64,000 nucleotides of DNA from Ascidiella aspersa (taxonomy: Eukaryota), in assembly GCA_963924565.1 (NCBI GenBank), contig OZ004609.1, positions 25,668,001 through 25,732,000 of the forward strand, in the 5' to 3' direction. Every line of letters begins with the position of its first letter. The stretch's first letter is position 1. Below the pieces are notes generated by a model. That model did not search any database. It saw only the letters and a program-made list of their open reading frames with translations, and was not told the DNA's origin. Shown here piece after piece: positions 8,571 to 44,843 of the stretch. The position numbers and the translations under genes are program-made.

Positions 8571-8584
8571 GTTGTTATGACAAC
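8571..8584. promoter_or_regulatory. RFX X-box-like motif GTTGTTATGACAAC
   Basis: Near-palindromic 14-mer of X-box form about 356 bp upstream of the TTC29 ATG. Ciliary genes are typical RFX targets. Confidence 0.5.
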
Positions 8585-8939: not shown

Positions 8940-11900
8940 ATGACAACTCTGCCTGATATAAAGCGAAAAGGAACGTCAAGTTCTATGAGAGAAAGAAGTG
9001 AGTTACAAGTAAATATATACATGAATAAAAATATTCGATCACACTTTAACGAAAAGGTACTTACAGCCTGATCACAATTTTCAAATTAAATTACCTAAGT
9101 TTGGCGCTCCTCTAGATTCCTACCACATTTTCGTCCGGGGTGAGGGTATATTGCTAACACTATTTGGGTTAGGGTGAGAGTTTGGGCTTGGATGTTGCAA
9201 GTATTATTAATATACTTAATTCTTACATATTTATGCCTTCCTTGCCATTTGAAATTTATCAACTCGTTTTGTTAGTGTTAAAAACAATCCTACCACAGCG
9301 TTCAAACAATTATTAAATCAACGCACAATATTTGGGTTAGGATGCAGGTTAGCATTAGGGTGTGGCTTGATCAAGTATTAATCTGTTTATTATCCTACCC
9401 AAATGCTAACCCAAATAATAATGTGGGCCATAGTACGATTCTAGACCAGCGCCCTAAGTTTAAATTGATCTATAACCTCTTTTATATAATTTAATGTATG
9501 AGTTACTAACACTAGGTGCAATGTATCTATAAATAGCAATATATTGTTGGTGCAAATATCCCCACACTTCATTTTCAGTAATAACATTTAAAAAAAAAAC
9601 TCTGTTATGAATATAGAAGGGGAAATCTTTATGGAATCCAAAACCAATGGCAGCAGGTTTCTGCTTGTCGATCACTGTTCCGCTGACGCGTATATAAACA
9701 ATAAAAAAGTTTAAAAACCAGAGTAAAATCAGGATCAGACATTTTTTTAAAAGGAATATATATTTCGCCTATACTGGCATCGTCAGTTCCTATAAGTCTT
9801 TACTTATCCTGATTTTACTTTGGTTTTTAAACTTTGAGTTTTATTGCTGATATAAATAAGTCCATGCTGTCTTGGTGTGCCACTTTCAACCTAGACTTTG
9901 TAAACTCTACGATTTTATGTTTAGCCGAAAAAAATAACTAAATTATTAGAACAATCCGGAAGTCAGGTTTATGTAGATGGAATTGTATTTACCAAAGCTA
10001 AATTGCTTTTATTCTGATAGTTTACAAATGCTTTGTCGGTTTTCTACCAATAAAGCCTGCATTAACACCCTAATAGCACAATTTTTTTGTCACAATACTG
10101 ACATGCAACCAAGATGACCTTAATGCAGTGTGATGTTTACCTTTGGTCAAAATAAATTTCTGTATAAAAGAACAAAACTTATTATAATTGCTTTTATAAG
10201 GTGCTCCTGCTCACAAAGCCATGAGATTTATGACATGGAAAGAAAGAGAACTTCAGAAACAGGAGGGCATTAGAGCAGAAAAGCCCATTATGACTAAATT
10301 GGAAACTGCAAGGTAGTATTTAAGTTAGTGATAATATTAGTGATAAAAAATTATATCATGTTCAATTTTTGATCAAATCTATCTTTGTAAACATAAAATT
10401 AAACGTAAGATATAATTTATGCAACAATATTGTGTTAAATTATCTTTAGGCCATAAATTGTACTTTTTACTTTGTTGTAAAGAATCTTAAAATCAAGAAA
10501 CGAAATGTGTTGCTTTTCCCCAAAAAGCGATTGCAAACCGTCAAATAAATTCATTTTTCAGTTACCGGAACACATACAAACACAACTTATGTGTTACCAT
10601 GCTCAAGGAGGGTTACCACAAATCATTTGACGAGTTGTTTAACTTGATTGAAAAGAGGAAAAAACTGAAAAAAGAAAGTGGCCCAGAGTCGGTTTTATGG
10701 CTTGTAAGCATAATATTTTATTGTCATTGAAACTCAGATAATAAGTTTATGATTTTATTTCTTTTTTCAGGAAAAACCTCTAGAAGAGGAAGAAGAAAAG
10801 CTTGATCAGCTATGGTTGTACCTCACAAAAGCTGAAGCATCTCTTAGAACAGGTTGGTATATTTATTTTAAACCAATCACAGAAATCCATTTTTTAGTGT
10901 ATATATTTTACACTATGTCCTTTAGAAATTTTTTTTCTGAGATAACAACATAATCGCCAAATAAAGAGGTATTGATTGGGACCAAAAACAATTTTCTTCA
11001 CCAAAAATATAAATCTGTATAACTAATTTGGTTAATGGGCATTCCAAAGGGACTGCGAAATACTGATTACAACAGCAATCAATGTGCACATAGTTTCAAC
11101 GGCTCCTGTAAACTATGGTTGTACAATGGGTAGTGGCCTTGCAAAGGGGGGCAGAGGACTTCACAATCTATAATGCCTTGAGAATTAAAAAAATGCACTG
11201 GTGGCTAATGTTTCTCCAAATAGACCACCAATGATGCAAGGCTGAATAGCATCGCTAAAAGCCTTTTTAATACTATCAATAGCTGATAAAGCTGCGAAGT
11301 TTTCATTGCCGTTTTAATCAAGCAAGCCACTTTACAATGCAGGAAAGTGGGAGGACGTGTACGCTTGTAGACACAAGCTCGCCGAGTACTTCCTGGACAC
11401 CGGCGACTCCTGGCTCTCAGACCACTTCTTCTCCACGGCTCTTGACACCAGCCTCAACATCCGGCTGGACGGACATCGGAGGGAGGCGGAGGCTAGGTGC
11501 AACATCGCGCTGTCGCACGAGAGGAACGGTGAGTACGCGTATCGGTCTCCTCCTTAATGAGACTATGTTGCGAGGGCGTACACAACTCGGAGCCATTTCT
11601 TGTAACGTATCACACCCTAAGCCGAGAGCCCGCAAAATCTTTAAAAAAAATCTATTTGAATTAAGAGAGTGGTGGCCAAGGTGAAATTATCTTGTAATTA
11701 ACGTGTGTCAACAAATATTTGACAGATCACTACATATATTTTCTAAATAATATAAACTGTAAAATAAATGCGATGTCCCGGTCGCTATATCGAGCAGCTG
11801 TTAAAGCAAACATATTTGTCACAGACAATGCCGGAATTTTGATTAAGCTTATCAACCGTGCGGAGCTAAGTTGTTACACATCCTGATAAAATTGTTGTGA

Positions 11901-14900
11901 CGACGTATGACATAACTACTTTTTGTTTCATTCATGTCAGTTTGTTTTTTGAAATACCTACCCGATGAGAAGAACGAATACAAAGATCAATGCTTTTTCC
12001 TTTAAAATCGCGCCCATTAGCAAAATGAAATGAAACAGTATTTACTTTTGGTCTGCGTAAATTGCTGGTAAACAACTACTCAATGCAGCGTTGGCAGTTT
12101 GATTGAACGGCTAATTTGCAAGCTTAAAATTTCCCTCATAACTTTCAACCCTCATAACCTCGCCTAGCGCATTTGAAGTCTGCGATTTTTTGAGCGTGTG
12201 TCAGTTACTAGGCGCCGAAATTGTTACCCCTGGGTTAAATCCGTTGCGAAGATGTTGATTTAACAAAGCCGTTAATTGCCCTGCACATACTGGGATACGC
12301 TGTTTGGTAAACCCGGCAATGAGATTTTGCGGTGTAAAGGCCAACGGGGCATACTACCATTAGCCCGAACGTTGCCTATCCTCATTACCGCGAGGATATT
12401 TTTACATTGCAGATTAGTAGAGTTGTCATTTTTACGTGGTCTACCCTACGAAATGTCGATTTTTCCAATAAAAGTGACAGCGCTATTTTTTACACATAGC
12501 TAAACTTTTTATGGGGAAGAAAAATCGAATTTCGCCGTTGATGTCGCATTTCGCTCCTTAAAAACTACGCCGATGCAGTTCGACGTCGAGCGCTAACAAT
12601 GTGTACTGTGTACACTGCACACTTTTCGACTTCCCTCGCGCAATGATAGATTTTTCGACGAAAAAACTTTCGTTCCAGTATGGCGAATCGACGTGTGCAA
12701 TTTGCAATTTCCTCAGCTTGCGATCCCGGCCGCGTTGACTATTTTTTTCTTTATTAATAAATAAAATTGTGAAAAAAGCACAAGGAAAACAAATTATAAT
12801 AAAAAAGTTCTCAGGCAGCTAACGACCATTTACTTTTGTTTATCGTGATACTTACTCTTTTTAAAGCCGAATGTTGCTCGGAATTTGTACAGAAGATAAC
12901 ATCGCGAAAAAGCATAACATAGTCGGTGCACTTTCTGCTGATTTACATTGATAAATGGCATACCGTGCACATAAAAGGACACAATTCACAAATGTTTTGC
13001 ACGGTTCATCTTTGTGCACTCCGAAGAGTAATTGCTCGGGGGAAAAATACACGATATTCGTAGTTTCATACTTAACCACTCGCTCACATTTTCGCAGTAT
13101 AAACACGTCACAGGACACAAATAGAACAGGTGATATACGGTTTTCGCAGCCTTTTTGCAGACGTTACATTGCTTTAATTCTATTTTACCAAACGAATACA
13201 GGGAATCATTTGTTACAATTGCGCCCAAGTTAAACTTAATCTGCAAGCTTCTTAGTTTGTTATTGATTGTTGAATTGTACAGGTTACGATCCGCAACTTA
13301 AGGTCCGCTGCTATTCTAATTGAGCTCTAGGTGGAAAGAGGGTTGTTGTTTGTATTTCTCGTGTTGACTAAAATCCGACCCCGCTCAGGGCACGAAGCGG
13401 GGAAACCCCGGCGGCAAAGTTCCAACCGGAACCAGGGCGTGCAGCGTGCCAAGGACCTAAGCTCCAAAACGCTCCCGCAAACTGACCCGTTAAACCTTGG
13501 AAATCATCCTGTGTGTAGGGTTCAAGTATGTTCCTCTGCCACGCGAACCCCTAATCTTGTGCTTTCGGCGCATATTTATATGTCCCGTAATAGGCCGACT
13601 TTATACGCGCGCGCGCCAGGGCGATTTACAGGCGGCTGTCGACTTGTGCAGGGCCGCGGTTTGTTTTCGATCTAGGCGCGCGGGGTCCTTTGATGGGTGA
13701 TCGCTTCATCTGTGGTGCCGACGGCGGCGGACCGCGGGGCCCGGGGCTGGAAAGACTCATGCGCTCTCTGTTTTGCCGGGGATTAAAGGCAGTGGCGGCA
13801 CGGCTTGACCCGGGGGGCAAATATTTACACAGCGCGCGATGCCCCCGGTTGTCTCGGCGCGACTGCTCAACTGTACATCAACCCGGGGTAGGTTTCTGCA
13901 TCTCGCGCGACGTTTTAGTCACAATCTGTTGTGTGAGTAAGCAAGCAGCATGAGTCATCGGTGGCCAGTCGTTCACACGGTCACTTCGGAAAGCAACTTT
14001 TTTCGCGCCCAGTTGTCAGCCGCTTTCCCTTACCAAACCTTTCGCATTGCATAAAATTGAGGGCACTCGCTTAATTTTCGTCTACGCACATTGCTGTGTA
14101 GTTTACAGTCGCGCCGCCCAGGATACCGCCCTGTGGCGATGTGACGCATTCCGGTCCTCGCATTGATCACCCCCGGTAAGCCCCCAACGGCAGCCGGGGG
14201 ATTGTTTTCCACTCCGTCTCGCACCTCGAGGCGCGAAGCCCTCGTTTCTCCGCGCCGCGTTTAAATCCCACCGCGGGATTTCGTACGTGCGATCGCCTTT
14301 TCGCGTGTGGTTTAATGCGCCCCTTGGTTGGTTCTGTTAATCGCTAACCCAATAACCGGCCGACGGGCGCGTTTAATTTTCCGTGTCTCATCGATAAACC
14401 GGACAACCGTTTGTCCGCCGGCGTGAGAATGATTCGGCACTGACCGCGCCTGATGCAGTACCCAGGGTGGCACGCGAAACTACAAAGCACCAGCGTGATT
14501 TAATGAGCGCATTTCTCATCAGGTGAAAGACGTCATTAGCCTAAGGAGCGGAGTGTTTAAACAAGCGATAGCAGACTAGGATTCCCCGTTGAAGTTTTGT
14601 GAATTTTGTTCGTCATTGGGCCTCTCCCCACTGAAATGCGCCTGTCGCATTTCCGTTATTTGCCTCCGCCCAAAATATATGGGGCCAAGCCCTTCCTGAT
14701 TTGCCAATCGAAAGTTGCACTTTCAATCAAACGAAAAGTTCAGTTTAATAACACTTGTATCGACGTGGGTGGGTTCGAAATTGCCCTGACTCCGTAATAC
14801 TTGTTTTTAGTTTGAACAGATATTTATTGACATATACCAGTGGTCGGCAATTTTTTTTGGTCGTATAGTAACGAAACAATCGTTGTACTCGACCTAATAT

Positions 14901-17900
14901 TTTTTATGACAATTTGTATCGGATTGAACGGCTGTGTATTTTGCAAAAAAATCAGGTGGTGATCTTACCGATAAAAATTATTTAATTTAACGTTTCTCTG
15001 TTCAGGGTCTTAATGATGTTTTGCCTACTTTTCTGCCAACACCATTACAGGACAGCCTCGACTTTTATGAACCTCCGTGGTATAATATCTAAGAATTAAA
15101 CTGATTTATTGTTGTATTTTTGTATGTCAGGTAATCTAAAAGCGGCGGCCGAGCAAATGGAGCAGTCGCACAGTTTGAGCTTGGATCGCGCGTGGATGGC
15201 AGATACAAGCTTCACACTACATCACCTCGTGTGTCGCCATATGTCAAGGTGGGCAGCAGCGTTAATTTCTTTGGATAAGCATTTATTCGTCAAATTGTGG
15301 AGAAAAAGCGTTTGTCATTGTTTTTTTATCATTAAGGAGTTCTCAAACAATTTCAGAGTATCTTACTTCTTGTGTTAATACGTCCTGTCCCAACGCCAAA
15401 AAGTCAAAAATATTTCTTATTGATTTTAAGCGAAAGCCGATAATTACTTTTAGCGATATGCAATCATCTTAACATTCGTCTAAGGCAGTGGTTCCCAACC
15501 TGGGGGTCACAAGGGGTTGTCTTGGGGGTCGCCGTGTAGTAGTTTTGCAGTATAGAAGGAGAAAAAGCAACCGCCAGTTTACATGGCTTTTGCTGTAGAG
15601 AACCATTACACTCTTCAATTAATGAATCAAGGCTAGCTTCAGTTAAACAATGTCTAATAAAAATGAACGAACGCTCAAACCGTAACTTTAGCTTGTGGGA
15701 CATACTTAAATAAGAACATTTTGGCCAAATGTCGATACAACCCGTCTAGATTTTTTTCCCAATTTGAATTTTGTCAATTTTAAAATGTGTTTTTTATTGA
15801 CGCTGGTTTATGTATCGTACACTATAATAGGGCGGTCGCGCAAGGTATGGAAAACTTGAAGGGGGTCGCGAGAACAAAAAGATCGGGAACCACTGGTCTA
15901 AGTTTAGCGTTAGCCTAACTTGACTGCATGATGCTTCGCTCGCTAATATCTGACGCGGACTATTACGCCGGACCGAATAGCAAGGGGCTGACGCAATCAC
16001 CGACCGATCCCCCATTAGCGGCGTTTCTGCTTTGACTCGCATGGTCACCGCACGTCAAAATAGGAAGTGCCGCGTTTTGCTCGTCACATTGCCGGTTAAT
16101 GGCGTATTTGGGGGGCTTCTCACTTCCGCCTTTCAGGCGAAAAGCGAAACCAAAACTTTCAAACCGCTTAGTCCCGAAACGAAACGAGTTTTGATCCGGC
16201 AGCGATCGTAAAAGGCCGCTCCCACCTGTAAAAGGATTGTGATTGCGTGGTCCCAACGCACGATTAAAAAAGCAGTGTATTCAGATTCTAATTTTAATTT
16301 GGATGAAATTTGGCAGAGGTATGTCTAACAAAAAAATTTTCTAAATCTGTCTTTTTCGTTCTTATTTACTAATTGTGCCGAAAGAATCACTTTGGTTATC
16401 CCCTGGATATATCGGAAATTATTATGTTTAAAACAAGTTTTCAACAATTAAGTTTCCTGAAGTCCTCTTCAGTTTTTTTATGTTTTAAAGAAAAAAAATG
16501 TGTTCAGTTTGCTTCGTGTTACATAATGATTTCATACGTAAGAGGAAAATCGTTGAGTAATGCTGGGCATGCAGGTAGAGAGAAGGTCCACCTTCCCGCA
16601 TAGATCATTCGCCCTTTAATGGCGCAGCTTATAGCATGACTTTAACATTTTCCCGTATCGTATGGCGAATTATCGATAAGGCGACCAAAAGCGCCAAGTG
16701 CTTTGCGTGGAAAGGTGCCGAAAAATTGGTCGCGCGACCTTGCGTGCAACAAAGCAAGATACTGTGTTTCCCTTATCGGTGGCAGATTAACAGTATCGCA
16801 TCGTTTCCTATCAGCGATTGGAAATTCCTTTCACACCCGTTGTCACGATCGACCCAGCCTGAACCCCGAACCGAAAACCCTTATCCAAACCGCCGAATAG
16901 TCCTCGCCACTTGTCAAACCTTTCCAAATGCGTTGCGAGGAATCTCGAAGCGGCCCGTAAATAACTTCCACTTTCACGCACGTGTTGCCTGACAATTCGC
17001 CAGCGTTGAAAACGCCCCTGTTGATTGACCCTCTATCGCACCGCATATCAGCTATAGATGAGCGGTTCATATGCACTTCCCCGTATCGTTGTGAATCCTA
17101 TCAGCGCCAAATCAAGTCCTGGTGCTGTTACTGTTGCTGCTTCGTGTTTTAGCGCGCGATAACTCACCCGAACCCTTCTGGAACCGTGTTTGCGGCGCGA
17201 TAGAGGGACGCTACCGACACCTTGCGACGTAAAAACGCATCGATAAAACTGCCCTGAGCAATAAAATCTAAAAGTCCCGCTTACCCGCCCGAGTTGTTAC
17301 GTTGAAACTAGTGGAACGGATGGTGCTTCTAATTACGGTAAAACTTCAAAGTGTGGGGGCCAGGTTTGAAAGTTGATCAAGTCAATTACCGACCAGTTGC
17401 GCCGGTCGGTGACGTCATTTACGTGGTCTCCGCTGCAAACTAAGGGTTGTTCGACATACCGGCAAAATTATCTTGCAAGATCGGGATTTTCGGTCTGCCA
17501 CTGCGCTTTTAAATGCATTCCTGCTAAATCGTTTTTCGAATTGTTGCGCAAGACACAGTCTGCGTAATATGACTTTTTGACATGTTCGTTTGCAATACAG
17601 CAAATCAGATAATCAGATTCCCATATAAAAACGGGGTATATTTGAGGATTTTTTTAATTTCGAGTAGAATGAACTACGATGTTTTTAAAGCCGGATGTTA
17701 TAATACACTTCTTCCCGGGCTGATTTTTTTCATTTCTATTCCGCGTTTCCCTTCCCCTGCAATAAAGCAATATTTTCGTGGGCTTGCAATTAGTAAAACT
17801 CGAAAGCAAAAAGGCTTCTCCAAAAAATAAAATCTGCTGATGAAAATTAAAGGTGATATTGCTAACGATTTTAGAAAAAACCTCGTGCAGGTATGGGCCA

Positions 17901-20900
17901 CTAACAGTTTTCGATATACAGACATCGAAGCTTACTAACATGTGTTCCTATGTCATCTGTTTGTCGACACTCAATTTCGATAAAAGCTAACTCTCTGACA
18001 TCAATCGTTATTACCGGAACTACTTTAAAACTAAAGTAATAGAACGCTATTATTTTTGTACTAAGGCTTAGTTGTCTTTTTGCCATTACCACGTTAGTTA
18101 CGGGTTATAGTTTGTTTCAAATCAATGTAATTATATTTCTGCGCTGGCTGTAAAATTCCACGTTAAGGCAAGTTAAGTTAAGACCTGAGCGGAGGCATTT
18201 TTACGCGCACAAACTTCTTTAAACCTCACACATGCGACGCCATTTTGTCAGGGTGATCAGGATTAATGATATGCACTGTAAGTACATACACTATAACTTA
18301 TATGTGCAAAATCTTAAAATAGTGTTCTTGTGAGTTTTTTACTGAACCAGTCGATCGCGAGTCTCTAAAAAAATATTTCAGTTGATCGCAATCGAACATA
18401 ATTTGGCTACACCCGGAATATAAGATTTATTTTACGCGTAGGATCTACACGTCTCTGGCCGAGAAGTCCTCTATTGTGGCCGACGCCCAGGCGCTCCTGC
18501 ACCGCGCCTACGACATGTCCAAGGAAGGTTGCGACAACATCCAGGAGGCGCGTGCGTCGCTGCAGCTCGGACGAAACTACGAGCTCGGCAAGGACTCGGA
18601 AACCGCCATCGAGGTATTGCGGGCTTATGCGATTGTTTTTTGGGGGGGCTTATGCGATTGTTTTCGCTGATTTAAAATACCGACCGATCTATTTAAAATG
18701 CGAAGCTCATCACCGTTTACCTTTCCGCGTACCGCAAAACGTTAAACGGTGAATTCCACGTCTTTTGCTCATGCGCTTTTCTACAGACCCCGCCATTTGT
18801 TTACCGATGGCGATAACGGTGCGCCACCGAAACCTTGCAAATTGAAATTGATGTCTTGCAAACGGCATCCGATTTTCGTTCTCAAAATTACCAGGAAATC
18901 GGTGTATTGTGTCCCAGCCTTTGCTGGCTTTGCAACTTTTTCCGTGATCGTTCGTGCGTCAAAACAACAGCGCATCATCAGAGCACGATGGAATTCCAGT
19001 AACAGCTTACGTAGAATTGCACCGCAGATGTAGTTGGGATTTTTGTTTTTATAAGTTGGTGATGTTTTTATGAAAGTAAAGCGCAATTCCCTGTCTGAAA
19101 TATACCATTAACTATTTAGACAAGTAAATTGATAATACCGTTTTCTTATAACTACAAATAATACACTTTTACAATAACTTAATTTCGATGTAATTGTTTG
19201 GCATACGTTGTTGAAAAATACTGCAGGATTTGTTCATTAACTTATATATATATGAAGAGCGTTAAATATCACGTTAAATTTCACTGTTATTATTAATTTT
19301 CTATAGGGGTTTGCCTTGGTAAAATATTACAACAAAACTTGACATCTTCCAGTATTTGTATCGGTTTAGCAACCTCCTGTTAATATTAAGTACAGAAAAA
19401 ACTTTGCAACTTTTCTGATCGCAATCAGTCCCGCAAACGGTTCGAAAAGCTCGCCTAAGAAAACAACGGGAATATGTCTAGATCCCGGGCGCTTAGTGGA
19501 AAGCCGGGTTAAATCCGACTGCCGGCTTAGCTCGAAATCGCCCCAACACGCGCCCAGACCGCAAACGCCCCAGTAGTCTGCGGTGCGTCGGGGCCGCCCG
19601 GCGAGAGGGGGGGGGGGCAGCCCGGGAATTCCTGGGCGCCCTGCCAGGGAAGCTTGCCGGCGCGTGGCGCCAAATTAGGTCGAAGGCCGAGGTTAAAATT
19701 GCCTGTAAACGCGGCTGTCGGGCGGGAGGCTTAATAGATAGCGGGCGGTCAAAATTACCCGTTCCAACTACTTGCCCGTTCGTAGGCGCGCTTACAAGCC
19801 CGAGTAGCAGCTACAAAGTAACGCCCGCCGTTTCTTTCTCTTTTTTCCGCGCTTGCTGCCCCGTCAAGTATCTGAGCCGCAGCCTGGAGATGGCCCAAGA
19901 TCTCGGCGATAGTCAGATGGTCGGCGAGGCGTGCGAGGCTCTGGCCCGCTCGCACCAGACCCAGGGCAACGTGGCCGCCGCCGTCGAGTGCCTGGAGCTT
20001 TTTGCTGAGACGTCACGCGCCAACGGGCACCAGGTCGAGCTCGTCCAGGCGTGCAACTGTCTCGGTGTCATCTACAACACAATGGTGAGAGTTGTTTTGC
20101 TTGCCGTCACTAATTGATTACTCGTGATGCCCGGTTTGCGTGACTCGCCTTTTGGTTTGCACACTCGTTGGTCGGCACGTATAGTTTAAAAAGTCCATTT
20201 TTTAATTTACAGATAAAGTGTATTGCTGTTAGTATTAAAGCAATTTTTAACTTTGCTGAAGAATGCTGGTGTACTCCTCTGCCAACTGCCCTGCCGCGTG
20301 TTCACACCCATAATTTCCAACTTTTGCTTTTATATAACAATATTACCTATAGCTTTTATATAACAACATTAGTTATATATGTCCTGGCTTTTTGGGGTTC
20401 CCTTCCTTTCTTTATACTAATTTCCCTTTTGAGAACTTCTCTTCTGTGAATGTCGTGCCACCCTTTGTCGCCATCTGGCGGAAGTTGCCACGGATCAGAT
20501 TCTGGCTGTGTTTACTGCGTTTTACCGTTTGCAAAACTTTTCTACGTGTTTACTACGCCAGCCATTTAAAGCAACGCTTGAGAGGAAGCGCTACATGCCA
20601 ACTTGCAAGAAATTACTATTAAAAAAATTAAAAACACTATTTTAAGGCCAAATCTGCAAAGCCCTTTCAATTCGAAGCTTATTCTAGTGAGTTATTGGAC
20701 AACAGGCAGCTACACCGATAAATACAGCCAATTATCAAAGTAATCGACGATGTTTGCGTAGATTCGTGTAGCGTGTAGCGGCTGTAGCCCTTAGGAGAAA
20801 CCGAAATTAGTCAACCAATAGGGATTTTATTTTAAACAAGATTTCGGTTGCCGAAAAAACTGCTTAGCTTTACCTTAAAGGTTTAACCATTTCTCCGCAC

Positions 20901-22336: not shown

Positions 22337-25300
22337 TCCCCGTGTCAAGATATGTTTTTTTATTATTTTCCTTTCGTTTATGTATTCGCCCCTAAGTTGA
22401 TCCTACTCATATCGGTAGAGTAAACCTGATAACACATTTTAACACTTCCGCACGGTGGCGTAAGCGAGATTATTTTTGTTCGAGAAAAATCTTCTTCAAT
22501 TTTGACGCTCTGTGTTGTGTTATTGAAGTTTTATATTCTGCTTCAATCCCGTTTTTCTGCAAAAATCAGGTGACCAATGTATCATTCCGAAGTTTTGGTT
22601 CAAAAACATGTTCGACTGTTTTAAAGCTTTTCATATTTGGGACTTTTTCTTAATAAATATATAGTTTTTAGTACTCTAAAGTCTAAACCTTTTGCAACGA
22701 GTCGATGAGTCAAGTCAACTGTATGAATCAACAGACTGTCCGTAACGTAATGCATTTACAATACACGCGATTTTTAATCAATAACCTGTTCAGGAAGTGC
22801 AATATTTTGAAAAAAACAGCGGTGTAGCCTTTTAACATATAGAGTAAAATTCGTACTTTTGGTCGAATGAGCCTTATTGCAATGTCACTGTGGGACTGAA
22901 ATGGCTAGCAAAATTTTCTAAACCAAAACAAAAATCAATTTAAAAGAAGACCCAATTTCACCTTACCTTTAGTTAAGTCAAAAATAGAGTTTTTTGTTGT
23001 AAGACACAACAATGCTTTACTAGTGTTAAAAAAACAACGAGGAAATAATGCATTCATAAAAATATTTGTACAATGGGCAAATCATTCAGCAGTTTGATTT
23101 CTTCTTGGGAACAAATAGATTGTGTTGAAGATCTTATTTTTATTATTTGCATTTTTGTGTACAGACAATTGACATTTTGTAAACTCCTAAAAGTTACAAC
23201 CAACTGACTATAAACCTAATAAAATTTACTTTATAACTTAAATGCATCCTAAAATAGAAGGGACATGCTACATAATTTTAAAGACTTGCCGAAATTCGAC
23301 GCAAGCCTAAATATGCAGTACATCAGCGCTTTGACAGCATTATGTTGTGTTAGGCATAGTTGCTCTTATACCTTCTTCGTTTTCGTGTTTATCTCCGGCC
23401 GCAAAATTCGCGCTGCTTGCTTAATTTACTTGGATGTAGTGGGTCGCTTGTGGAGCGGTCCAAACAGAGAAAAAGGAGCCCGGGTGCGTTTATGGCCGAT
23501 TAATTATTTAATGCAGTTTGCACTTGTCCTGGTGCGCACCTGTCCCCTTCCGCCATCAAATATTCATCGCCCCAACCGTTGAAAAGGGTTCGGTGTCCGT
23601 CGTAGCCCGGAACACGCAACCGGCGCCGGTGTACACGGAAAGCAGCTTTCCCGTATTTATGAAAAGCGCGCGAATATGCGAGCGGCGGCGGCGCAAAGAC
23701 AATAATAAGCGTGGAGCGGGTCAACAACATGCAAGGACTGCTGTGCTCTCTCGCTCCTGTGCCCAACCTACTGAGTCACGTGCTCGCAAAGATCGATTAC
23801 TCTCAATTATTAATGACATGCAGGCAAGCAAGCGTTCGGCGAAGGGCGCCTATATGCGGCTCCTCCCTGGTTTGGTTCTGCAGCATGAGGCCCCCGATTC
23901 CTGGTTTTGCCTCTGCTGCTGCTGGTCATGGCGAGTTTGGCGATTTCGCACTTATACGGCCCACGTCATATGCCGTGTGATGGACGGAGCGCCAGAGCCC
24001 TCCCCCCCGTGCTCCCTGGACGGTAGTAGGACTCTTTACGTCACTGCTGTCGCGGTCCGCGTTCCGATTTTTTCTGCGGGTATATATTTTTTTCTTAACC
24101 AGGGCTCCCGTGGCGTTTGATGTAAGCGACGTGTGCAAGGCGACACTGACATGGCCTTTCGATTTCTGCGTCGCTTGTAAAACAAAGTGTACACAAACCG
24201 CGTAAATTTATCTTTCGACAGGCTGTCTGATACTGCTAGGTTTCGACAGTGACACAAGTTAGAATTATCTACATTTGTATAGGAATTAGTTCGATACATA
24301 AATTGTAAACTTTTGTTAGGGGCGATTATTTGGTTGTATAATATTCTCTTTAAAATGTGACATAAACACGTTACCGTCCCTATATTTCTAATATTTTTCA
24401 CGATCCTTGTGTGTCCACAATACGAAATCACAACTATCTACATAAAGGCATCAAACACCACTGATCTAAAGAGACACATAGAATACCAAATCCACTGTGG
24501 AGGGAGAAAATGACTTGAACTGAAATATCTAATAACTCTGCCGGCAAGAAAAAAACCAAACAAATGTCCCATGTTGCAAATTTTCAGGTAAAATGACAGC
24601 ATTTTTTTGTATAAACTTCAACTGTGGAAAGTAAGAAACAAATACAAATTTTGTTTTCGTTATTGTAAAGTAATTAAGCAAGATACGACACAGGAAAACT
24701 ATTTTTTTATTACAATTATTAAGGCTGATTGTCCGGCCATAGTTTCACTTACACTTACACCTTCTTGATGTTTTACTTTAGAATTTTTTTGGTCGGCTAA
24801 TCAGGCTGCCGGCAAAAATGATTTCCTACTGTCAGAAGCTTACTTAAGTGCTGAGAGAAAACGATCTAAATTCAATGTAGCCTAATCATCACGTCAAGAA
24901 GCAATTTACGCCAGACACATCTTGCATATCAGAATGTTTTTTTATTCAAAACAGGCTCCATCCATACCTATATCCTTGAGGATACCCAACTATCCCTTCT
25001 CTCCTTCAGGAAAACCGGCTCCATAAACTGGGACTAATAATCTAAAAACTGGATACAATAGACGCAAAATAATTGTATACCCTTGCTCTTCCTGCAACGT
25101 GCTACTGATTGACGTCGCACGCAATCGCTCACACCTCAAATTGGAGACGCAATGAGCATTTAATATTTATTAAACTTGTTCATGCATTCGCAATGAAGGC
25201 CTGAATATTTTATAAAACATTCGCTTGATAAAATATTGAACGGCGCGAAAAGCAAGACACATTTTCTGATCGTTTCCGACTTTCACTTTGGACACTCGCT

Positions 25301-28300
25301 TCGAGACGGAACAGTGTTTAATCGCGGTGCAGAATAAGAGAGCTCGTCCGGAACAAAGAGGAAGAATTGGATTTAACATCTGCAGGCGACTGCCGGATTA
25401 CAGAAACTTAGCTCTCGAAAGGCGCGAGAGCTTTTTTGTGTACTCACCTGGAATTAGGATGTGGATTATAACGAGAGGAAACGATAACGTTAGGAAGCAG
25501 ATCAAACCGGACGCTGCAAGGCGACAAAGGTGAGGCTTCTGGTCGGCCGTCGGTACTACACAAGGGCGGACATCGGGGCTCATCTGCCGGCGCCAAAAAC
25601 TTCGCCGATTTACGAGGATTAAATTCGCTGGAAGCAGAGCACGCGTGCCCACTTCGGTCACGTGGGCTAGTACGCGTGCCGTCTGCCGCCCTGTGCCCCG
25701 GGGGTGCTGGTCGCGCGACAGACTCCCCCTCGCCAAAGATGCCGTCTCCACGTTGACACACGCCTGGACATTTAAACTTGACGCTGGTCGGTGACCGTGA
25801 CTTGAACCACCACGTGTTTCCTCTCTCTCTGTCAGGTACGTAACAACACGTTGTTGCCGCGGTCATTATGTCAAACTCGCGCGGCGCTGTCGGTCAGCTG
25901 TTTTTCCTAGAGTCTGTCCAGTGGCCTCGTGGAGAACGAAGCCTCGTTAAAGTAGAGGGTTATTGTGACAGGGCGAACGCTGAACTCTGACGTGCCGTCA
26001 GCCAGCGGGTCTTTGTGTAACTAAAAACAGCATCGACACGATGATTTTTTTCGCCATCCCTTCTCCCCTATGACTCGACCTGAAATTAACGCCCGATGAT
26101 GAAATGAAATTGAGGGAACTTGGTGTAGTTGAATGGGCGATAACGCGCACAAGTGCCACTTTGGCGGGTGTCGCGAAACAATTTGTCGCAACTTGCCTTT
26201 TGTAAACAAATCCCTGGTAATGCGGCGAGCGGCGCGCGACGGTGGCACGCACGCGACAAGCAGCGGCGCAGTTATTGTTGCCGTGATGCTTGCGGAAACT
26301 TCGAATTGCTGGTTTGCGCGCGCGGCTCTTTGTCCCAGCGCGCGTGTTGGGGTAGACCAGCCCCGGCTAAATTACATCTGAGCCTCTGTGTTGCTACTTT
26401 AGTTGCCCGCGTATGACGACGACGTTACGCGACGGCGCGTGACCGTAATTTCCTCTAATGGTCAAATGAAATTACAAACCCCGCGAGCGTGAACGCGCGA
26501 CTTCAATCGGCGGTGGGACGTCTCCGGCGCTTGCTGGGGATTTCGCGCCGAGCCCCAACCCTTTTGAAATCGCGCCCCCGGACAAAATTGTCGCTCGAGC
26601 GTCGGCGCGATGAAAGGCGAAGTGATTTGTACTTTGGCGATGTTAACAAATCGAGAAGTGGCACCATACCGATTGTGGCGGAGTCTGTAGGGCGCGCGGC
26701 GCGTTTTTGTTCGTATTAATCGAGGCTCGTCACATAAAAGCGATGCAAATTGCCGCAAAATCATTTCGCCAGCGCACGTGCGAGGTAAGTGAGGGGGCGA
26801 TTTTAAAAGAGGGCCCCAGGACCCGCACCATTCAACATCGCAGGCGCATTTCGAGCAACGAATCGATATGCGCAGATAGGCTACATTACGGAATCCGCCA
26901 ATAAAGAATGTCAAGTCGAAATCTATATCGAACTCTCCTTTGCCGCAATTTTTTCTTCTATGTAGGGCTGCTGGCCAAAGCCCGGTTCGTAAATAGATTT
27001 CGATGCCGAAATCGCGTTCGCACATGCTACATAGTTGCTTTTCATGTCGTCCAAGCAAAGAAGAGACCGGAGTGCGCGAGCGAGATTAGCCCGATATCGA
27101 AGTTGCCTGAGCGACGGGGCCCGGCTTCGGCACAGCGAGCGCCTAATGTGTCCGGGCCGACTGCGTAATGGCGCGGGTCGTTGCTAATGAGATGATGCTA
27201 ATCGATTTTGCTCGGCACCAATGACAGATTTTTCGCCGTGAAAAAATGCGGCATATGTTTTCGGTGTCAATTTTTTGCTGCTGCGGCGGCGAAAGAAAAA
27301 GTCTAAGCGCACCTCTCGGCACACGTTTGTTTGTTGAACTTCTTTTAATTTATTCGACCTTGAGAACGGCAGGGTTCACCCTCACCTACTAATTGTTTTC
27401 AATAGACGGAAAACACTTTTCTTTTAAAGCACACTTTATATCCTCGAAATGGAAAGTTAATGTGCAACCACCTAACTAAAATATAGAGCTAAAATATATA
27501 CAAATTTCGAAATAATTGAAGTTAAGTCCTAATCGATTAAATTTTGGCAAAGTAGGACTGCAGTAAGAAAGCAAACAGGCCGTAATGCCCTTTGAAAAAT
27601 CGATAATTGTCAATCAATCCCAGCTGACATCTAATAATAATTATTCCTTTCGTTCGCTTAAATTTGATCAAAAGTCGCCATTCAAAGAATGATCACGTAA
27701 AGTCCGTGTGAAAAACATTACCAAACGCAATACAAACCTTGTGGTTTCAACCGCTCATAAAGCACCGAATCTTCTCGTTTGTTAATCATAAAAAATTAGC
27801 TAAGACGTTCAACGGTCAGTGTTTACAAGTCCGCGATTTCGCCGTTGGTTGAGGGTCAGGATCCGGCGGGAGAATTCGCGCTGGCCCGGTGTACCGGGTT
27901 ACCGCTGCGGCCAAGATAAATAAGTAATGAGTGGCGAGAAGCTAGCTACACTCTTGAATATTTTATTCTTCAATGAATTATTCAACCAGTGCAAGTGGCG
28001 ATAATTTGCTTGAGCCTGAATATTCATGAACTACTTTACTCAATTGTTTCTTTTAATATTTTATAGGGGCCCGGGCGTGTTTCTGAGCAGCTGATACCAG
28101 CCTACCTGCATCCAGCAGCTGACGCGGCGCGATTTCAAGTCTTTGCCCAACGGCTCGTGGGATTCTTTGCTGGGACTGATGACAACATTCACACAATTAA
28201 GCCGTAGTTTTAAACGATTTTTCGGTGTAGATTATTGTGAGAAGTCCTATTTCATTTGGCGGCACTTTGACCCAAGCCTTTGTGGTATGTCGTTTTACTG

Positions 28301-29758
28301 TGCAGAGCTATAGGTAGACTGTTTATAGTTGTATTTTACTATTATTTTTCACTATCACCACGAAACACATCCGCTTCCAATTCGTTGTCCACTGCTCATA
28401 GGCTGATAGTTTTACGTTTAACTTATAAATTGGTTAGATTGTTTTGCAAAGCTGCGAATACACGCGAAGCGTCGGAGAGGCCTACAACAGGCAATACGTA
28501 TAATTGAATCAATCTGCGGCAGCGCAGAGGCAGTTCGGTCAAAAGGCGCCGCAGCAGGGAACCCTATTTGTCATATGGCGTGGAAGCCCGCTGGCTGGCT
28601 GGCTGCTTTCTGCTGTACAACGCTGGTTCAACTGTAGTTGCTAACTGCTGGCACACGTCAATGCCCCCCGGGCCAAAGTCTTTCCGAAAATCGCCAATTG
28701 CACCGGTCGGGAGGTGCCGCTATAAAACGTCGCTGAAAACAAAGCGGAGTGACATCTGCCGTGGCGCGACAACTATCAGGGATTTCTAATCGAAAATTTA
28801 GCGCTTAAGCGCTGCACATGTCTCCCTACTACCTGCCAGAGATTTAAACAATAGGTATTGTTTGTTTTTGTTTGCGTTCGCCCTGCGAGCCGATAAAGAC
28901 TTGAAACGTTACGCAGAGAATATCTTCTGTCTGGTGTCGGGCACCTCTAAAATTTTGAATTCACTTGGTTCTTGTTTTTGTTCAATCAGATGTTTAATGG
29001 CATGTCTGTATTAATTTAATTAATGTTTTGGGTTTAACACTTAACCTCAAAGGTTTGCCACGGTTTCCCTGGAAAACGTTGCCCTTTTAATATAGCCTAT
29101 AGTATGGATTATAGTTAAAAACATAATACCTCTCACTCAAAAACAAAAAATACGTGGAGTGGATTACATTGTATCTGCAATTACTTGTTCTGATACCCAC
29201 TTTTAGAAAAGTTTAGAAAAGTCTGTTACAGCCTTTGTTTCCCAGTTTGAAATATATCACTCAAAAGTTCAAAATATTGTTCGACATCAGTTTATTGCAA
29301 CGTGCACATACTTAAAAGGAACTCAAACAAAAAATAAAAAATAAGAAGAGAAGAATTAACGAGAAACTTGAATCGAGGTTGTCGCCACAGCCGACGACAA
29401 CAACAGCAATGTATATAGCGCGGTATAGAAAATTGAAGAAAATGCCCGAGAGGTGCAAATCGAATCAGCAACGCAAAGAGAGTGTTTTCAGTTCTACAAA
29501 TCTTATTTCCAGGCTTTGTGCAAATCGGTGTCCTTGGCGCGTCAGTGCTCAGCGTTTGCAATCGACTCTCGGAGCCCTATGGTCCTTCTCCGACGACCAC
29601 AGTGCGTGTTTCACAGTATATAGCAGAAGCAGCAGCATCGTGTAGTACGTGATCGACTTGTAATTAAGGTAGATAGAGGAGAAACGGCAGGCAGCGGTTT
29701 CGGCTGAATCCAGCAACAGTGTCCCGCGTTAACGGCGATTAAAGCAGCATTTTGCACG

Positions 29759-32700
29759 TTACATCATTCCCTCCTGCGAACAGTCAAATTCGTTAGAATA
29801 GAGGTTTCGAAACCCAGTAAGATGTTCATTTATAAACTAAGTATACTTGCCAGATAAGCTGTAATGACTTTTAACTTAATATTTGCATTTTTAAGTAGAT
29901 TTTTTAGTCTAGTGTTAGTTCAATTTTCACGTTGTTTATTTTACTTACCGCGTTAAATGCAGAAAACTTCATTCTCTTTTGCTTTTGTCTCTGGTTACAA
30001 AACCAAACGCGGACTACGTTTTTCTTCAAGTCAAGCTTTTCGGCAATGGCAGCAATCTTCTCTGAAGACGGGCGAGGCTAAAATTGCAAAAAAAAATTGC
30101 TTTAAAAAATGTAAAAAAAAACATTTAAAGAAACTCTACTGATAAAGGAATACAAATTAACCATTTAGTGAATGTTTTTGGTAAAATAATTCTTTTGGGT
30201 GACAAATCATATGAGTACTCAATAAATCGTCTTACCTGGACAGCGAAGTAAGCCTCCAGTGATCTTTTCTCCGGAGCGGCTATGGAAGTCCTTTTCCTCT
30301 TCTTGTCTCCGAGTCCGGCGCTCTCCATCTTTCTCCTTTGTTCTTCCTCGGCTTTCTCCAGCCAAGCGATAAGGATCGGTTTGAGAGCAACCATGTTGTT
30401 GTGACTCAATGTCAGGGACTCGAATCTGTTAAAAGTTCCACGTTTGCTACAAAGCCAGCGATATGTAAATAAGCAGCGAACGAAATGTAAAACCCAACCT
30501 AATGAATTAAAAAAAGGTAAATAAAAAATACCATCATATTAGACCGGATATCAAGAATACACATAGAAAACGGGCAAGACGTTGACGTTTAGCATACAAA
30601 AAACTTCAACGAACCTGCAAATTGTGCTCTGGCTCAGAGATCCAACGCCAGGCAGCTTAAGGTTGGCAAGCGCCCGTCCAACGTCGTTTTGGGTCACTCC
30701 TAACTTAATGCGGCGTTGTTTGAACCTAAAGAATCCAAGAGAAACCATGTTAAACAAGCACTCGATTTCCCGCAAAAACAGCAAGGTTACACAGCAAAAT
30801 CGAAGCCGGTTTCGCTTTGCCTTTGTGTTTACGAACCTTTCCGCAAACGCCTCCAGTTCCCTTGGGTCTGCGTCGTACTCGCTTGCAGGAAAATTTGCCA
30901 CTATGGTGTTTGGCGACGCTGGAAAAAAACATTATAAATTTATTTGCGAATGCGGTTGGATTTAGGGCCTGTGTATGGGCCAAATAAAAGTATTTTGCAT
31001 GTACCAATCTACCTGTAGAACTGTTTATATCAGTGCTATTAAACTACCGCCCAGGGGGTACACCAGAGGTGAATTTGACAATGAAATACTATTTTAACCG
31101 CTAATGCAGCAAAAACTAATTAGCTAAACAAGGGGGTAACTTAAGTACTTTAATTTCTATCAGCGGTAACGATTCCAAAAAGGGTAAGAACCATTAGTTT
31201 ATTATGACTTTATAAATCACACATTGAAAACAATCTTATCTCCTTAATAAGCCTATCTTTTACCTGGCTGTGTCGAGTTGCAAGTTGCTGTTGAGGGGGG
31301 CGCCACTGAAGGGTGTATCGATGACGTCACCGGGTGAAAGTGACTGGTCGGGTTGTACGGAGGAGCAGTGTGACTGATGTAGTGCGGTTGAGGGGGCACA
31401 GTGTCGGCTGACGTCATCATAACCGAAGACGAGTTGAAGGTGGGGTGTTGGTAGGGAGGAAAAGCACTGGAAAGACAAGCAGGAAATGTTAGTGCTGGTG
31501 CGTACATGCGATGTAAACCTTATAAGACTTATATCTAACATTAAGGTGCGTGGCAAACAACGTTGAGACCGGCATTCTTTTTTAAAAAATTAATGATTGT
31601 TTTACTAATGCTTATAAGCACGGATTGTAGCTGTAGCCAACACTCATTAAACTTATCTTTCAACTCTACATAACCGTATAAAACCCAGAGAAAATGAATC
31701 CTGATTCCTGAATACGGGAACATGACTTTCAATTCTAAAGCCAAGCTTTGTCACAAATTTTATGAACTCACCAGTGCGATGATCCGAGTTGATCGATGAC
31801 GTCACTTGTGTCAAGGGAAGATTGTAGCGCCGCGGTGTGATGAAACGCCGAGGGAGGATGCATTGAACTGTACACTGCAAATTTGAACAATAAATTATTG
31901 AAATTTACAGGTGTAAATGTATTTCATGTTCCAAATTGTTACCTATATTTTTTAATAGGCGATTTTCGATCATTTTTATTCTTTCTTTGACTATTTTTAT
32001 TTTTCAAACAAACAACATGAACTTTTTAATAAATTACCAGGTGGGGGCATGCTTGAAGTGGTGTGTTGCTGGGTTGCGTAAGGTGCCGAAGGCGCGTAGT
32101 ACGAGTGGTTGTTCGGTTCCGGTTTGAACTGGTTCTTACCGGTGTAGTCAACGGCGGCGAGGGCCTCGGCCCTCGCCAAAAATGACTCGTCGAAGCCAGC
32201 AAAAAGATTGCCCTGTGAAAAACGAAGATTGTTGTGCTTTTGTAAAGACTATTAGTGAGTTTCATTTCAAGCCTAAAGACATGCGCTATTCCATAACTGT
32301 TTGGTTCGGATTTAAAGTGAATTAACGATTGAGTTCTGAAAAGAGCAAAACAGTTTCATAAGCACAGATGGCAAGCGGCTCGACAAATATATTCGAGAAA
32401 TATAATGTGGGTAAAATATAGCGCCGAGTTTCCCACGTCCCACAAAATTGCTTGCCAAAATCTCGTCGCCGGAACATGGCGAGCGACATCGAATCGAGTT
32501 AACTTATGACGGAGTGAGTTATTTGTCCAGACGATTGACCCCGATCCGGAGCGGTGGGGAACCTCGGCTCGCCGGCCTCATGACAAACGACCCGGGCGCC
32601 ATTTTGTTTTCGGCGTGAAATTCGCAGATGTCGGCGGAAAATTCGCCACAAAGTGCGCGGGCCGCGCTCGGCTGCTGCCGGTAATTAAAATATGTCCAGC

Positions 32701-33189
32701 ATAATGCGTCATGAAAAACAATTGTGCGCAGTACTGTGCGCGTCGAAATATAGCACTATAGCGAAAAGTGTCCGAATCGACAATTTCGATTGAATTCCCA
32801 TCACATCACTTTTAGCCGCCATTCTGGATATTGGCGTGTATAAATTTATCATCAAACTTTCGTTTTAACTTTCTTATTTTTTTTTATTTTAACTTTATTG
32901 TCAACAGAACAATGTTTGTGTTTCAAAAAGAAGCACTGCTTTCATTTATTACGATAGTCAATAAGATATACTTTTCTTAGAAGAATGCCACTTTTATGTT
33001 AAACGGCCAAGTGCAACTTACGGAATAGGCCACGGGCGACGTCATGCAGTGACGTCGCATTGCGTCGGCGGCATTGTGTAGGGGCGTGTACTTCTGCTCG
33101 GTGCCGTAGCAGTTGGCGTTGAGGGTGGACACGGTGCTGACCGGCGAAGGGGGTCGGTGGTGGTGAGGGGCGAGCATGTTGGTGAACAT
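29759..33189 (-). CDS. POU4: POU class IV homeodomain transcription factor (Pou4/Brn3/unc-86 family), 9 coding exons, ~391 aa
   Basis: Exons (minus) 33189-33022, 32212-32038, 31874-31772, 31466-31264, 30918-30837, 30725-30615, 30425-30236, 30077-29949, 29773-29759. Phases consistent (1176 nt). POU-IV box [22 protein letters not shown]; POU-specific domain [23 protein letters not shown]...[23 protein letters not shown]; homeodomain [60 protein letters not shown]. The tiny last exon (EGMM*) is less certain. Minus-strand AATAAA at ~29291-29296. Confidence 0.96.
31031..31195. mobile_element. Degenerate short hAT-like MITE in POU4 intron 4
   Basis: CAGTGCTATTAAAC...GGTAAGAACCATT ends with GGGGGTA subterminal motifs, similar to other CAGT-ended elements in the window. 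Confidence 0.4.
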
Positions 33190-33889: not shown

Positions 33890-34030
33890 CTGCTGCTCTT
33901 GCTGCTGATGACGACTCTTCGCCGGACAGCGTTAGAACGCAGAGCCGGAAGCTCGTCCAGTTTCGTTTTCTGCTGCTGCTCTTCCTTCTGTTGTTGTTTT
34001 TAGGGGGCGTGGATATTTTCCGCTTCCTGT
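33890..34030 (-). other. Candidate non-coding 5' exon of POU4
   Basis: Strong donor CAG|GTGAGC at 33889 and no ATG in the preceding ~140 nt. Acceptors downstream at 33264-33265 (ttgttttcAG) and directly before the ATG (33190-33191). The 5' boundary is approximate. Confidence 0.45.

Positions 34031-44796: not shown

Positions 44797-44843
<47 letters not shown>

What the first reader, a model, noticed from the sequence alone, without database searches (positions are those of the whole stretch)
8940..34030. TTC29-POU4 tail-to-tail pair: apparent ancient chordate microsynteny / genomic regulatory block
Seen: TTC29 (+) and POU4 (-) converge, with stop codons ~7.4 kb apart. Established (recalled): human POU4F2 and TTC29 are convergent neighbours on 4q31, and tunicate genomes have lost most vertebrate microsynteny. 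Inference: the pair is kept together because POU4 enhancers lie inside the bystander gene TTC29. Both genes also relate to ciliated cells, so co-regulation is an alternative explanation.
Basis: partly seen in the sequence, partly recalled or inferred. Interest (0 to 1): 0.8.

Follow-up and report, generated by a model that had tools for sequence, protein, structure and literature searches.

The report
Conserved POU4–TTC29 tail-to-tail gene pair
In this sea-squirt genome the sensory-neuron regulator gene POU4 and the cilium gene TTC29 lie tail to tail, as POU4F2 and TTC29 do in vertebrates and apparently in amphioxus; this is a good example of a known kind of ancient gene pair, probably held together by POU4 enhancers, but that mechanism is not shown here.

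Summary
An intact 10-exon TTC29 gene (+, ATG 8940, stop 22334-22336, 465 aa) and an intact class IV POU gene (-, ATG 33189, stop 29904-29906) converge. 7,567 bp of unique, ORF-free, RNA-gene-free DNA lie between the stop codons. The genome is an ascidian: its TTC29 is 71% identical to Phallusia and 61% to Ciona. Both genes are single-copy.

The ancient-synteny reading is largely supported. Papers place Ttc29 on the 3' side of Pou4f2 in mouse. The pair is also kept between human and fish. In Branchiostoma floridae v1 the two proteins are four accession numbers apart. In the hemichordate Ptychodera they share a chromosome but are probably not adjacent.

The regulatory-block mechanism is documented only in vertebrates, where mouse retinal Pou4f2 enhancers lie within and beyond Ttc29 and Atoh7 binds its terminal intron. 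In this ascidian it remains an inference. The 3' introns of TTC29 are long and GC-richer. Comparison with a congener (~90% identity), motif scans, CpG content and repeat content did not discriminate.

Verdict: a real and tidy new example of a known kind (trans-dev gene plus bystander microsyntenic pair), of moderate interest.

The parts
8940..22336 (+). TTC29 gene, CDS span. Exons: 8940-8997, 10201-10312, 10562-10703, 10771-10852, 11343-11528, 15131-15248, 18442-18613, 19869-20084, 21221-21446, 22251-22336 (stop 22334-22336).
   Evidence: tblastn of Phallusia TTC29 P0001 covers residues 1-465 colinearly. Splice search gives all GT-AG junctions and a 1398-nt CDS. PDB TTC29 hits come exon by exon. 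The gene is single-copy in G000. An RNA joint links 15246/8 to 18440/2.
11529..22250 (+). 3' half of TTC29: introns 5-9 are long and GC-richer (3602, 3193, 1255, 1136 and 804 bp; GC 0.39-0.45). Introns 1-4 are short and AT-rich (67-1203 bp; GC 0.21-0.35). This half is the candidate extension of the POU4 regulatory landscape, which is an inference.
   Evidence: Intron table. Mostly unique DNA apart from three short repeats. Blocks 13385-14814 and 15909-17474 align to a congener at about 89-91%, close to exon 6 at 91.5%.
22337..29903 (.). 7,567-bp spacer between the two stop codons. It holds the 3' UTRs of both genes and unique non-coding DNA.
   Evidence: Only a self-match in the 308-Mb genome. 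No Pfam domain in its long ORFs. No Rfam family or tRNA. Poly(A) signals lie at 22652 and 23218 on + and at 29291-27962 on -.
29904..30077 (-). POU4 last exon: C-terminal part of the homeodomain, plus the stop codon at 29904-29906.
   Evidence: 100% identical over 40 aa to amphioxus, lamprey and Ptychodera POU4. Stop-free segment.
30236..30425 (-). POU4 exon: end of the POU-specific domain, the linker, and the start of the homeodomain.
   Evidence: Pfam Pou. PDB POU-domain hits. All named homologues are class 4 POU. Junctions.
30615..30725 (-). POU4 exon: the main part of the POU-specific domain.
   Evidence: Pfam PF00157, E = 2.5e-13. tblastn. Junctions.
30837..30900 (-). POU4 exon encoding the segment just before the POU domain. 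Its 3' end at 30837 is firm; its 5' end is approximate.
   Evidence: tblastn to P0211, P0416 and P0434. Junction.
32045..32248 (-). POU4 exon with the class IV N-terminal box (about 32215-32147). Boundaries are approximate.
   Evidence: Aligns to the POU-IV box region of lamprey POU4 P0416 (E = 3e-9) and Ptychodera POU4 P0434.
33034..33189 (-). POU4 first coding exon: first in-frame ATG at 33189, donor at about 33034.
   Evidence: Aligns to the N-terminal motif of P0416 and P0434. In-frame ATGs at 33189 and 33177.
15477..15902 (.). Interspersed repeat (SINE-like) inside TTC29 intron 6. It is not part of the conserved block.
   Evidence: More than 40 copies at 75-87% identity across the genome. 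Multi-copy depth in the DNA and RNA runs.

Best explanation
This is an ancestral chordate microsyntenic pair. A class IV POU gene, a developmental regulator of sensory neurons, and TTC29, an axonemal inner-dynein-arm protein gene, have stayed neighbours in 3'-3' orientation since before tunicates, cephalochordates and vertebrates split. The most likely reason is cis-regulatory constraint of the genomic-regulatory-block type. Under this model, enhancers that act on the POU4 promoter lie 3' of POU4, in the 7.6-kb spacer and in the long 3' introns of TTC29. A breakpoint between the genes would then cut POU4 off from part of its control region, and TTC29 would be a bystander.

Shown here:
- both genes are intact, single-copy and convergent;
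- TTC29 is transcribed and spliced;
- the spacer is unique non-coding DNA.

Shown by others:
- the vertebrate linkage;
- mouse Pou4f2 enhancers in and beyond Ttc29.

Indirect: the amphioxus linkage, which rests on accession order.

Inferred only: that enhancers sit in TTC29 in this ascidian.
For: Gene models. Class IV identity. TTC29 identity. Single copy. Spacer unique and free of genes.

Vertebrates:
- Atoh7 binds sites in the terminal intron of Ttc29.
- A medaka ttc29 relic exon drives pou4f2-like expression 42 kb from pou4f2.
- Human TTC29 is kept in synteny with POU4F2 in stickleback.

Amphioxus: TTC29 is XP_002600909 and POU4 is XP_002600913.

The retention is selective. MeaB, MH2 and SBF family genes (the families of MMAA, SMAD1 and SLC10A7) are at least 4 Mb away or on other chromosomes.

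The pair fits the known pattern. 54.6% of the ancient pairs retained in tunicates are trans-dev plus non-developmental, and bystanders have longer introns. Here the introns facing POU4 are the long ones.
Against: No enhancer, contact or open-chromatin evidence exists for this species. The congener laid on introns 5-7 is too close to tell constraint from neutrality: introns 87-91%, exons 91.5-94%. Brn3-type motifs are not enriched. CpG o/e is at least 1 across nearly the whole window, so the 'CpG-rich islands' are not special. The repeat-free state of the spacer is matched by 1-8900. In Ptychodera flava the genes share a 50.6-Mb chromosome, but their accession numbers are about 528 apart, so the tight pair may not predate chordates. 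Amphioxus adjacency rests on accession order, not coordinates, and orientation there is unknown. No second tunicate was examined.
Confidence: 0.6

Rival explanations
1. Neutral survival. The pair is ancestral but persists only because no rearrangement has yet fixed in the short interval between the genes. Nothing in TTC29 or the spacer is needed by POU4.
For: The block is only two genes. The interval is small (7.6 kb), so it is a small target for breakpoints. No discriminating non-coding conservation, motif or chromatin signal was found. An equally repeat-free stretch lies outside the pair.
Against: Ascidian genomes are heavily rearranged and keep few ancient pairs. Other 4q31 neighbour families have dispersed. 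The same pair is kept in three chordate subphyla, and in the same 3'-3' orientation in mammals and here. Enhancers inside Ttc29 are documented in mouse.
Confidence: 0.25
2. Co-regulation. The two genes share a chromatin domain or enhancers because both are used in ciliated sensory cells, so selection keeps them together for joint expression.
For: TTC29 is an axonemal protein: it hits TTC29 chains of cilia and sperm doublet structures and the Chlamydomonas inner-dynein subunit. Pou4 marks ciliated epidermal sensory neurons in Phallusia and Ciona.
Against: Co-regulated ancient pairs are mainly 5'-5', whereas this pair is 3'-3'. In mouse retina Ttc29 is barely expressed and unaffected in Pou4f2, Atoh7 or Isl1 mutants, and the enhancers track Pou4f2 rather than Ttc29. 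TTC29 is expected in all motile-ciliated cells and in sperm, far beyond POU4 domains (established knowledge).
Confidence: 0.1
3. Independent re-association. The adjacency arose separately in tunicates and vertebrates by chance.
For: Genome-wide, about two adjacent pairs are expected to coincide between two fully scrambled gene orders (own estimate).
Against: The same orientation in both lineages plus proximity in amphioxus make chance very unlikely. Irimia et al. found 0.015 pairs in randomised genomes under multi-lineage criteria.
Confidence: 0.03

Closest known systems
Vertebrate POU4F2 (Brn3b)-TTC29 locus (human 4q31, mouse, fish)
   Same: The same two orthologous genes are immediate neighbours, with TTC29 on the 3' side of the POU4 gene (convergent). 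TTC29 is not co-expressed with the POU gene in retina. Enhancers assigned to Pou4f2 lie in and beyond Ttc29.
   Different: Scale: here the whole pair spans about 24 kb, whereas the mouse Pou4f2 enhancers spread over about 350 kb. Vertebrates have three POU4 paralogues and TTC29 stayed only beside POU4F2; the ascidian has one POU4. Enhancers are documented in mouse but not here.
Conserved ancestral microsyntenic pairs / genomic regulatory blocks (Irimia et al. 2012, PMC3514665; Kikuta/Engstrom GRB model)
   Same: A trans-dev gene is paired with an unrelated non-developmental 'bystander'. The pair is linked across distant lineages. The bystander has long introns. It is the class of pair preferentially retained in tunicates.
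   Different: Conserved non-coding elements inside the bystander, the operational hallmark of a GRB, were not demonstrated. Whether this pair is already in their list could not be checked, because the supplement is not held.
Medaka ttc29RR 'recycled' enhancer (Eichenlaub & Ettwiller 2011, PMC3206014)
   Same: It shows that sequence at the TTC29 position can act on pou4f2 from tens of kb away. The recycled exon corresponds to exons 3-4 here (10562-10852).
   Different: In medaka, ttc29 is lost and a dead exon became the enhancer. Here TTC29 is intact and expressed, and the orthologous coding exons showed no enhancer activity in mouse.

Membership tests
TTC29 (axonemal TPR protein) | Full-length colinear similarity to TTC29 orthologues rather than to generic TPR proteins | tested here: met
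   All ten exons cover residues 1-465 of Phallusia TTC29 at 71% identity (Ciona 61%, amphioxus 42%, mouse 38%). The exon 5 search of 1.84 billion proteins returns TTC29 orthologues on top. The PDB best hits are TTC29 chains.
TTC29 (axonemal TPR protein) | Intact, expressed gene | tested here: met
   No stops, canonical GT-AG at all nine introns, and the same length as Phallusia TTC29. The exon 6-7 joint is seen in 8 RNA-seq reads. Only one junction was checked with reads.
TTC29 (axonemal TPR protein) | TPR repeats recognised by Pfam | tested here: inconclusive
   Exon-by-exon scans give TPR_12, TPR_6 and TPR_7 hits below the curated cut-offs, with E from 1.8e-4 to 0.05. The joined protein was deliberately not scanned.
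POU class IV (Brn3 / Unc-86 / Acj6) | Bipartite POU domain: POU-specific domain plus POU homeodomain | tested here: met
   Pfam PF00157 on two exons. PDB POU-domain hits. The homeodomain exon is 100% identical over 40 aa to POU4 of amphioxus, lamprey and Ptychodera.
POU class IV (Brn3 / Unc-86 / Acj6) | Class-specific N-terminal POU-IV box and class IV best hits | tested here: met
   The exon at about 32215-32147 aligns to the POU-IV box of lamprey and Ptychodera POU4. Every named hit among the 120 best is class 4, Brn3 or I-POU. No tree against the other POU classes was built.
Genomic regulatory block / conserved ancestral microsyntenic pair | Linkage (four or fewer intervening genes) conserved across several major lineages | tested here: met
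   Ascidian: directly shown in this window. Vertebrates: literature. Amphioxus: three intervening accession numbers, which is indirect. Hemichordate: same chromosome but probably not tight. Other tunicates were not testable.
Genomic regulatory block / conserved ancestral microsyntenic pair | One developmental regulator (target) plus an unrelated non-developmental bystander | tested here: met
   A POU4 transcription factor and the axonemal TTC29.
Genomic regulatory block / conserved ancestral microsyntenic pair | Conserved non-coding elements or enhancers of the target inside or beyond the bystander | tested here: inconclusive
   The only relative available (organism C) is about 90% identical in introns and 91.5-94% in exons. 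No motif enrichment was found.
Genomic regulatory block / conserved ancestral microsyntenic pair | Physical and functional interaction of those elements with the target promoter | not testable with these tools
   This needs 4C/Hi-C, ATAC-seq, reporter assays or deletions in an ascidian.

The most novel reading that the evidence does not exclude
The POU4-TTC29 3'-3' block is one of the few regulatory blocks to survive tunicate genome scrambling. Its compact ascidian form, about 24 kb, would hold in the spacer and in TTC29 introns 5-9 the miniature counterpart of the ~350-kb vertebrate Pou4f2 enhancer landscape, including proneural-factor input. That would give a directly testable model of how a sensory-neuron selector gene has been wired since the chordate ancestor.
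Probability: 0.4. Interest if true: 0.55.

Novelty: new member of a known kind. Interest (0 to 1): 0.4.

Why it matters
POU4 (Brn3) genes are terminal selectors of mechanosensory and retinal ganglion-type neurons. How their expression is controlled is only partly mapped, even in mouse, where the enhancers are scattered through Ttc29. If the ascidian pair is held together by the same logic, all candidate elements lie within about 18 kb, in animals where electroporation reporter assays take days. That makes enhancer homology between tunicates and vertebrates testable at this locus. It also adds a clean 3'-3' case to the catalogue of ancient trans-dev/bystander pairs, and it dates the association to at least the chordate ancestor. 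It does not reveal a new kind of mechanism.

Tried and rejected
1. The look-up of encoding contigs was tried on amphioxus TTC29 (P0004, P0126) to read gene order directly.
2. The supplements of Irimia 2012 and Touceda-Suarez 2020, which would show whether the pair is already listed, are not held.
3. Paper searches for TTC29 with POU4, microsynteny or Ciona found no statement of the tunicate or amphioxus linkage. Phrase searches for Ciona Pou4 reporter regions in two papers found nothing.
4. RefSeq XP-number distance was used as a proxy for adjacency in Ptychodera. It is only suggestive, because XP numbers are not guaranteed to be positional.
5. Brn3 site scans (RTTAATGAGY: 0 found against 0.9 expected; ATAATTAAT: 4 found against 1.8 expected, with none in the TTC29 introns) showed no signal.
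6. CpG o/e is high nearly everywhere in the window, so it is not a mark of the introns.
7. Repeat-freeness of the spacer was considered as a sign of constraint. It was rejected as weak, because 1-8900 is equally repeat-free.
8. Long ORFs in the spacer, in the introns and around the POU4 5' end have no Pfam domains, so they were not taken as genes.
9. Cross-species footprinting with public runs failed. Runs X4 and X3 are essentially the same species, and X5 is too close.
All searches were done exon by exon or with database orthologues.


Full report
**What is in the sequence**

The window has no N runs. On the + strand, ten stop-free pieces between 8940 and 22336 align colinearly to the entire 465-aa TTC29 of the ascidian Phallusia mammillata (P0001, CAB3267335.1).

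A splice-site search constrained by reading frame and by similarity to P0001 gives these exons:
- 8940-8997
- 10201-10312
- 10562-10703
- 10771-10852
- 11343-11528
- 15131-15248
- 18442-18613
- 19869-20084
- 21221-21446
- 22251-22336

All nine introns are GT-AG. The CDS is 1398 nt, which gives 465 aa, the same length as the Phallusia protein.

Searched separately against PDB sequences, the exons hit 'Tetratricopeptide repeat protein 29' chains from axoneme structures at residues 133-198, 251-303, 304-366 and 367-441. Exon 5 alone, searched against 1.84 billion representative proteins, returns TTC29 orthologues on top: Phallusia 78%, and the Branchiostoma cluster named TTC29. Whole-gene identity is 71% to Phallusia, 61% to Ciona, 58% to Clavelina, 42% to amphioxus and 38% to mouse. 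The genome is therefore an ascidian, closest to the phlebobranch Phallusia among named sequences.

TTC29 is single-copy in the 308.6-Mb assembly. An RNA-seq run of the same species shows the exon 6-7 joint (15246/8 to 18440/2, GT..AG, 8 reads) on the strand expected for a + strand mRNA.

On the - strand lies a class IV POU gene. The firm 3' exons are 30725-30615 (POU-specific domain), 30425-30236 (end of POUs, linker, start of the homeodomain) and 30077-29904 (rest of the homeodomain, stop at 29904-29906). These rest. Upstream exons carry three further segments, each aligned to lamprey and Ptychodera POU4:
- the segment just before the POU domain, ending at 30837;
- the class IV N-terminal box, at about 32215-32147;
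- an N-terminal motif in the first coding exon, with the ATG at 33189.

The N-terminal junctions are ambiguous. Every named protein among the 120 best hits of the POU exon is class 4: Brn3, POU4F1/2/3 or I-POU. The genome has three POU loci and only this one is class IV-like.

The two genes converge, with 7,567 bp between the stop codons.

**Surroundings**

The spacer 22337-29903 matches only itself in the genome. Its long ORFs have no Pfam domain. It holds no Rfam family or tRNA.

Poly(A) signals suggest a TTC29 3' UTR of about 0.3-0.9 kb and a POU4 3' UTR of about 0.6-1.9 kb. That leaves about 5-6.5 kb untranscribed, which is an inference.

TTC29 is asymmetric. Introns 1-4 are short and AT-rich (67-1203 bp, GC 0.21-0.35). 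Introns 5-9, the half facing POU4, are 804-3602 bp with GC 0.39-0.45, like the spacer.

Interspersed repeats lie at 15477-15902, about 18307-18436 and about 21892-22110. The rest is unique as far as it was scored.

Beyond POU4 there are about 10 kb without recognisable genes, holding a 650-bp repeat at about 39060-39740. Then comes a CAP-domain gene (+) and a PTEN/VSP-like phosphatase gene (-). Upstream of TTC29, 1-8900 is unique, GC-rich and without recognisable coding sequence.

**Is the linkage ancient?**

*Vertebrates, from papers*
[quoted passage not shown] Ttc29 is barely expressed there and is unaffected in Atoh7, Pou4f2 or Isl1 mutants (bioRxiv 10.1101/2022.03.05.483140).
- Two Atoh7-binding sites lie in the terminal intron of Ttc29 (PMC7954457).
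- Human TTC29 is kept in synteny with POU4F2 and EDNRA in stickleback. In medaka a dead ttc29 exon 42 kb from pou4f2 acts as a pou4f2-like enhancer (PMC3206014).

*Amphioxus*
- The B. floridae v1 proteins are XP_002600909 (TTC29, 512 aa), XP_002600904 (a TTC29 fragment) and XP_002600913 (POU4 POU domain).
- EukProt numbers them P015421, P015416 and P015425.
- In that submission, accession numbers follow gene order on scaffolds. This is my own knowledge and was not tested. On that basis the genes are separated by three models, inside the 'four or fewer intervening genes' criterion of Irimia et al..
- Orientation there is unknown.

*Hemichordate*
- In Ptychodera flava, POU4 (XP_070553236) and TTC29 (XP_070553764/5) lie on the same 50,616,078-bp contig. 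Their numbers are about 528 apart, so tight linkage is unsupported.

*Within this genome*
- Families of other human 4q31 neighbours are at least 4 Mb away or on other chromosomes. These are MeaB for MMAA, MH2 for SMAD1 and SBF for SLC10A7. Paralogue identity was not resolved.

Only the pair has stayed tight. Tunicates keep few ancient pairs (197 in Ciona, 842 in amphioxus, 600 in human). Those they keep are mostly a trans-dev gene plus a non-developmental gene (54.6%).

**Mechanism**

The best-supported reading is a genomic regulatory block, with POU4 enhancers in the spacer and in or beyond the 3' part of TTC29, and TTC29 as a bystander. It is supported by the mouse data, by the 3'-3' orientation (co-regulated ancient pairs are mainly 5'-5'), by the selective retention of the pair, and by the intron asymmetry.

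It is not demonstrated here. Four tests failed to discriminate:
- Contigs of a relative (organism C, run X5) laid on 13300-19299 align over 13385-14814 (88.6%) and 15909-17474 (87-91%). Exon 6 is 91.5% and exon 7 is 93.9%, and other intron parts are replaced or unaligned. This relative is too close to separate constraint from neutrality.
- Brn3 motifs are not enriched.
- CpG o/e is at least 1 nearly window-wide, apart from 9-11 kb.
- A repeat-free stretch of similar size exists outside the pair.

The rivals are neutral survival (0.25), co-regulation in ciliated cells (0.1) and chance re-association (0.03).

**Limits and compliance**

- The spliced protein models were built only as coordinates.
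- Organisms of the sequencing runs are coded. Organism A is the window's species.

**Verdict**

The pair is an ancestral chordate microsyntenic pair with high probability (about 0.85). The regulatory-block mechanism is plausible by analogy with mouse (about 0.5-0.6) but untested in ascidians. This is a new, compact member of a well-described class, not a new kind of thing.

Noticed in passing
window 30726-30836 (-): The intron that splits the POU4 coding sequence just before the POU-specific domain is 111 nt, a multiple of three. It has no in-frame stop, and the stop-free frame runs 30554-30931. If retained, it would insert 37 residues directly ahead of the POU-specific domain. Whether this occurs is unknown.
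   Followed up: no
window 15477-15902; 18307-18436; 21892-22110; 39060-39740; 49405-50140: Five interspersed repeat families have dozens to thousands of copies in the genome, at 75-94% identity. The first two also show multi-copy RNA-seq depth, so members are transcribed somewhere.
   Followed up: partly
window 9001-11000: This is the only CpG-depleted part of the window (CpG o/e 0.38-0.70, against at least 0.9 elsewhere). It coincides with the AT-rich 5' exons and introns of TTC29.
   Followed up: no
window 1-8900: A unique, repeat-free stretch that is partly very GC-rich (0.51-0.58 at 1001-4000). It has long ORFs on both strands but no Pfam domain. It may be non-coding regulatory DNA lying 'beyond TTC29', or an unrecognised gene.
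   Followed up: partly
window 43196-57000 (+) and 59000-64000 (-): Neighbours on the POU4 5' side are a multi-exon CAP/CRISP-domain gene and a PTEN-like, voltage-sensing-phosphatase-type gene. Neither is a neighbour of POU4F2 in vertebrates, by my own knowledge.
   Followed up: partly
window 13300-19299 in runs X4 (organism B) and X3 (marine metagenome): Low-coverage contigs labelled as another organism, and as a marine metagenome, are 98-100% identical to this locus. These samples therefore contain this species or a very near relative, through mislabelling, contamination or environmental DNA.
   Followed up: no
window 18472-18473, 18526 (TTC29 exon 7): RNA reads of the same species, and the congener's contig, carry G, C and G where the assembly has T, A and A. 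In the RNA run this is 8 of 11, 8 of 11 and 6 of 6 reads. This is likely an allelic haplotype rather than editing.
   Followed up: no
G000 C3:19.36-19.79 Mb, 21.46 Mb, 35.14 Mb: SBF-family and MH2 (SMAD) genes lie on the same chromosome as the pair, but 4-10 Mb away. This may be a remnant of macrosynteny with the human 4q31 region. Orthology is not resolved.
   Followed up: no
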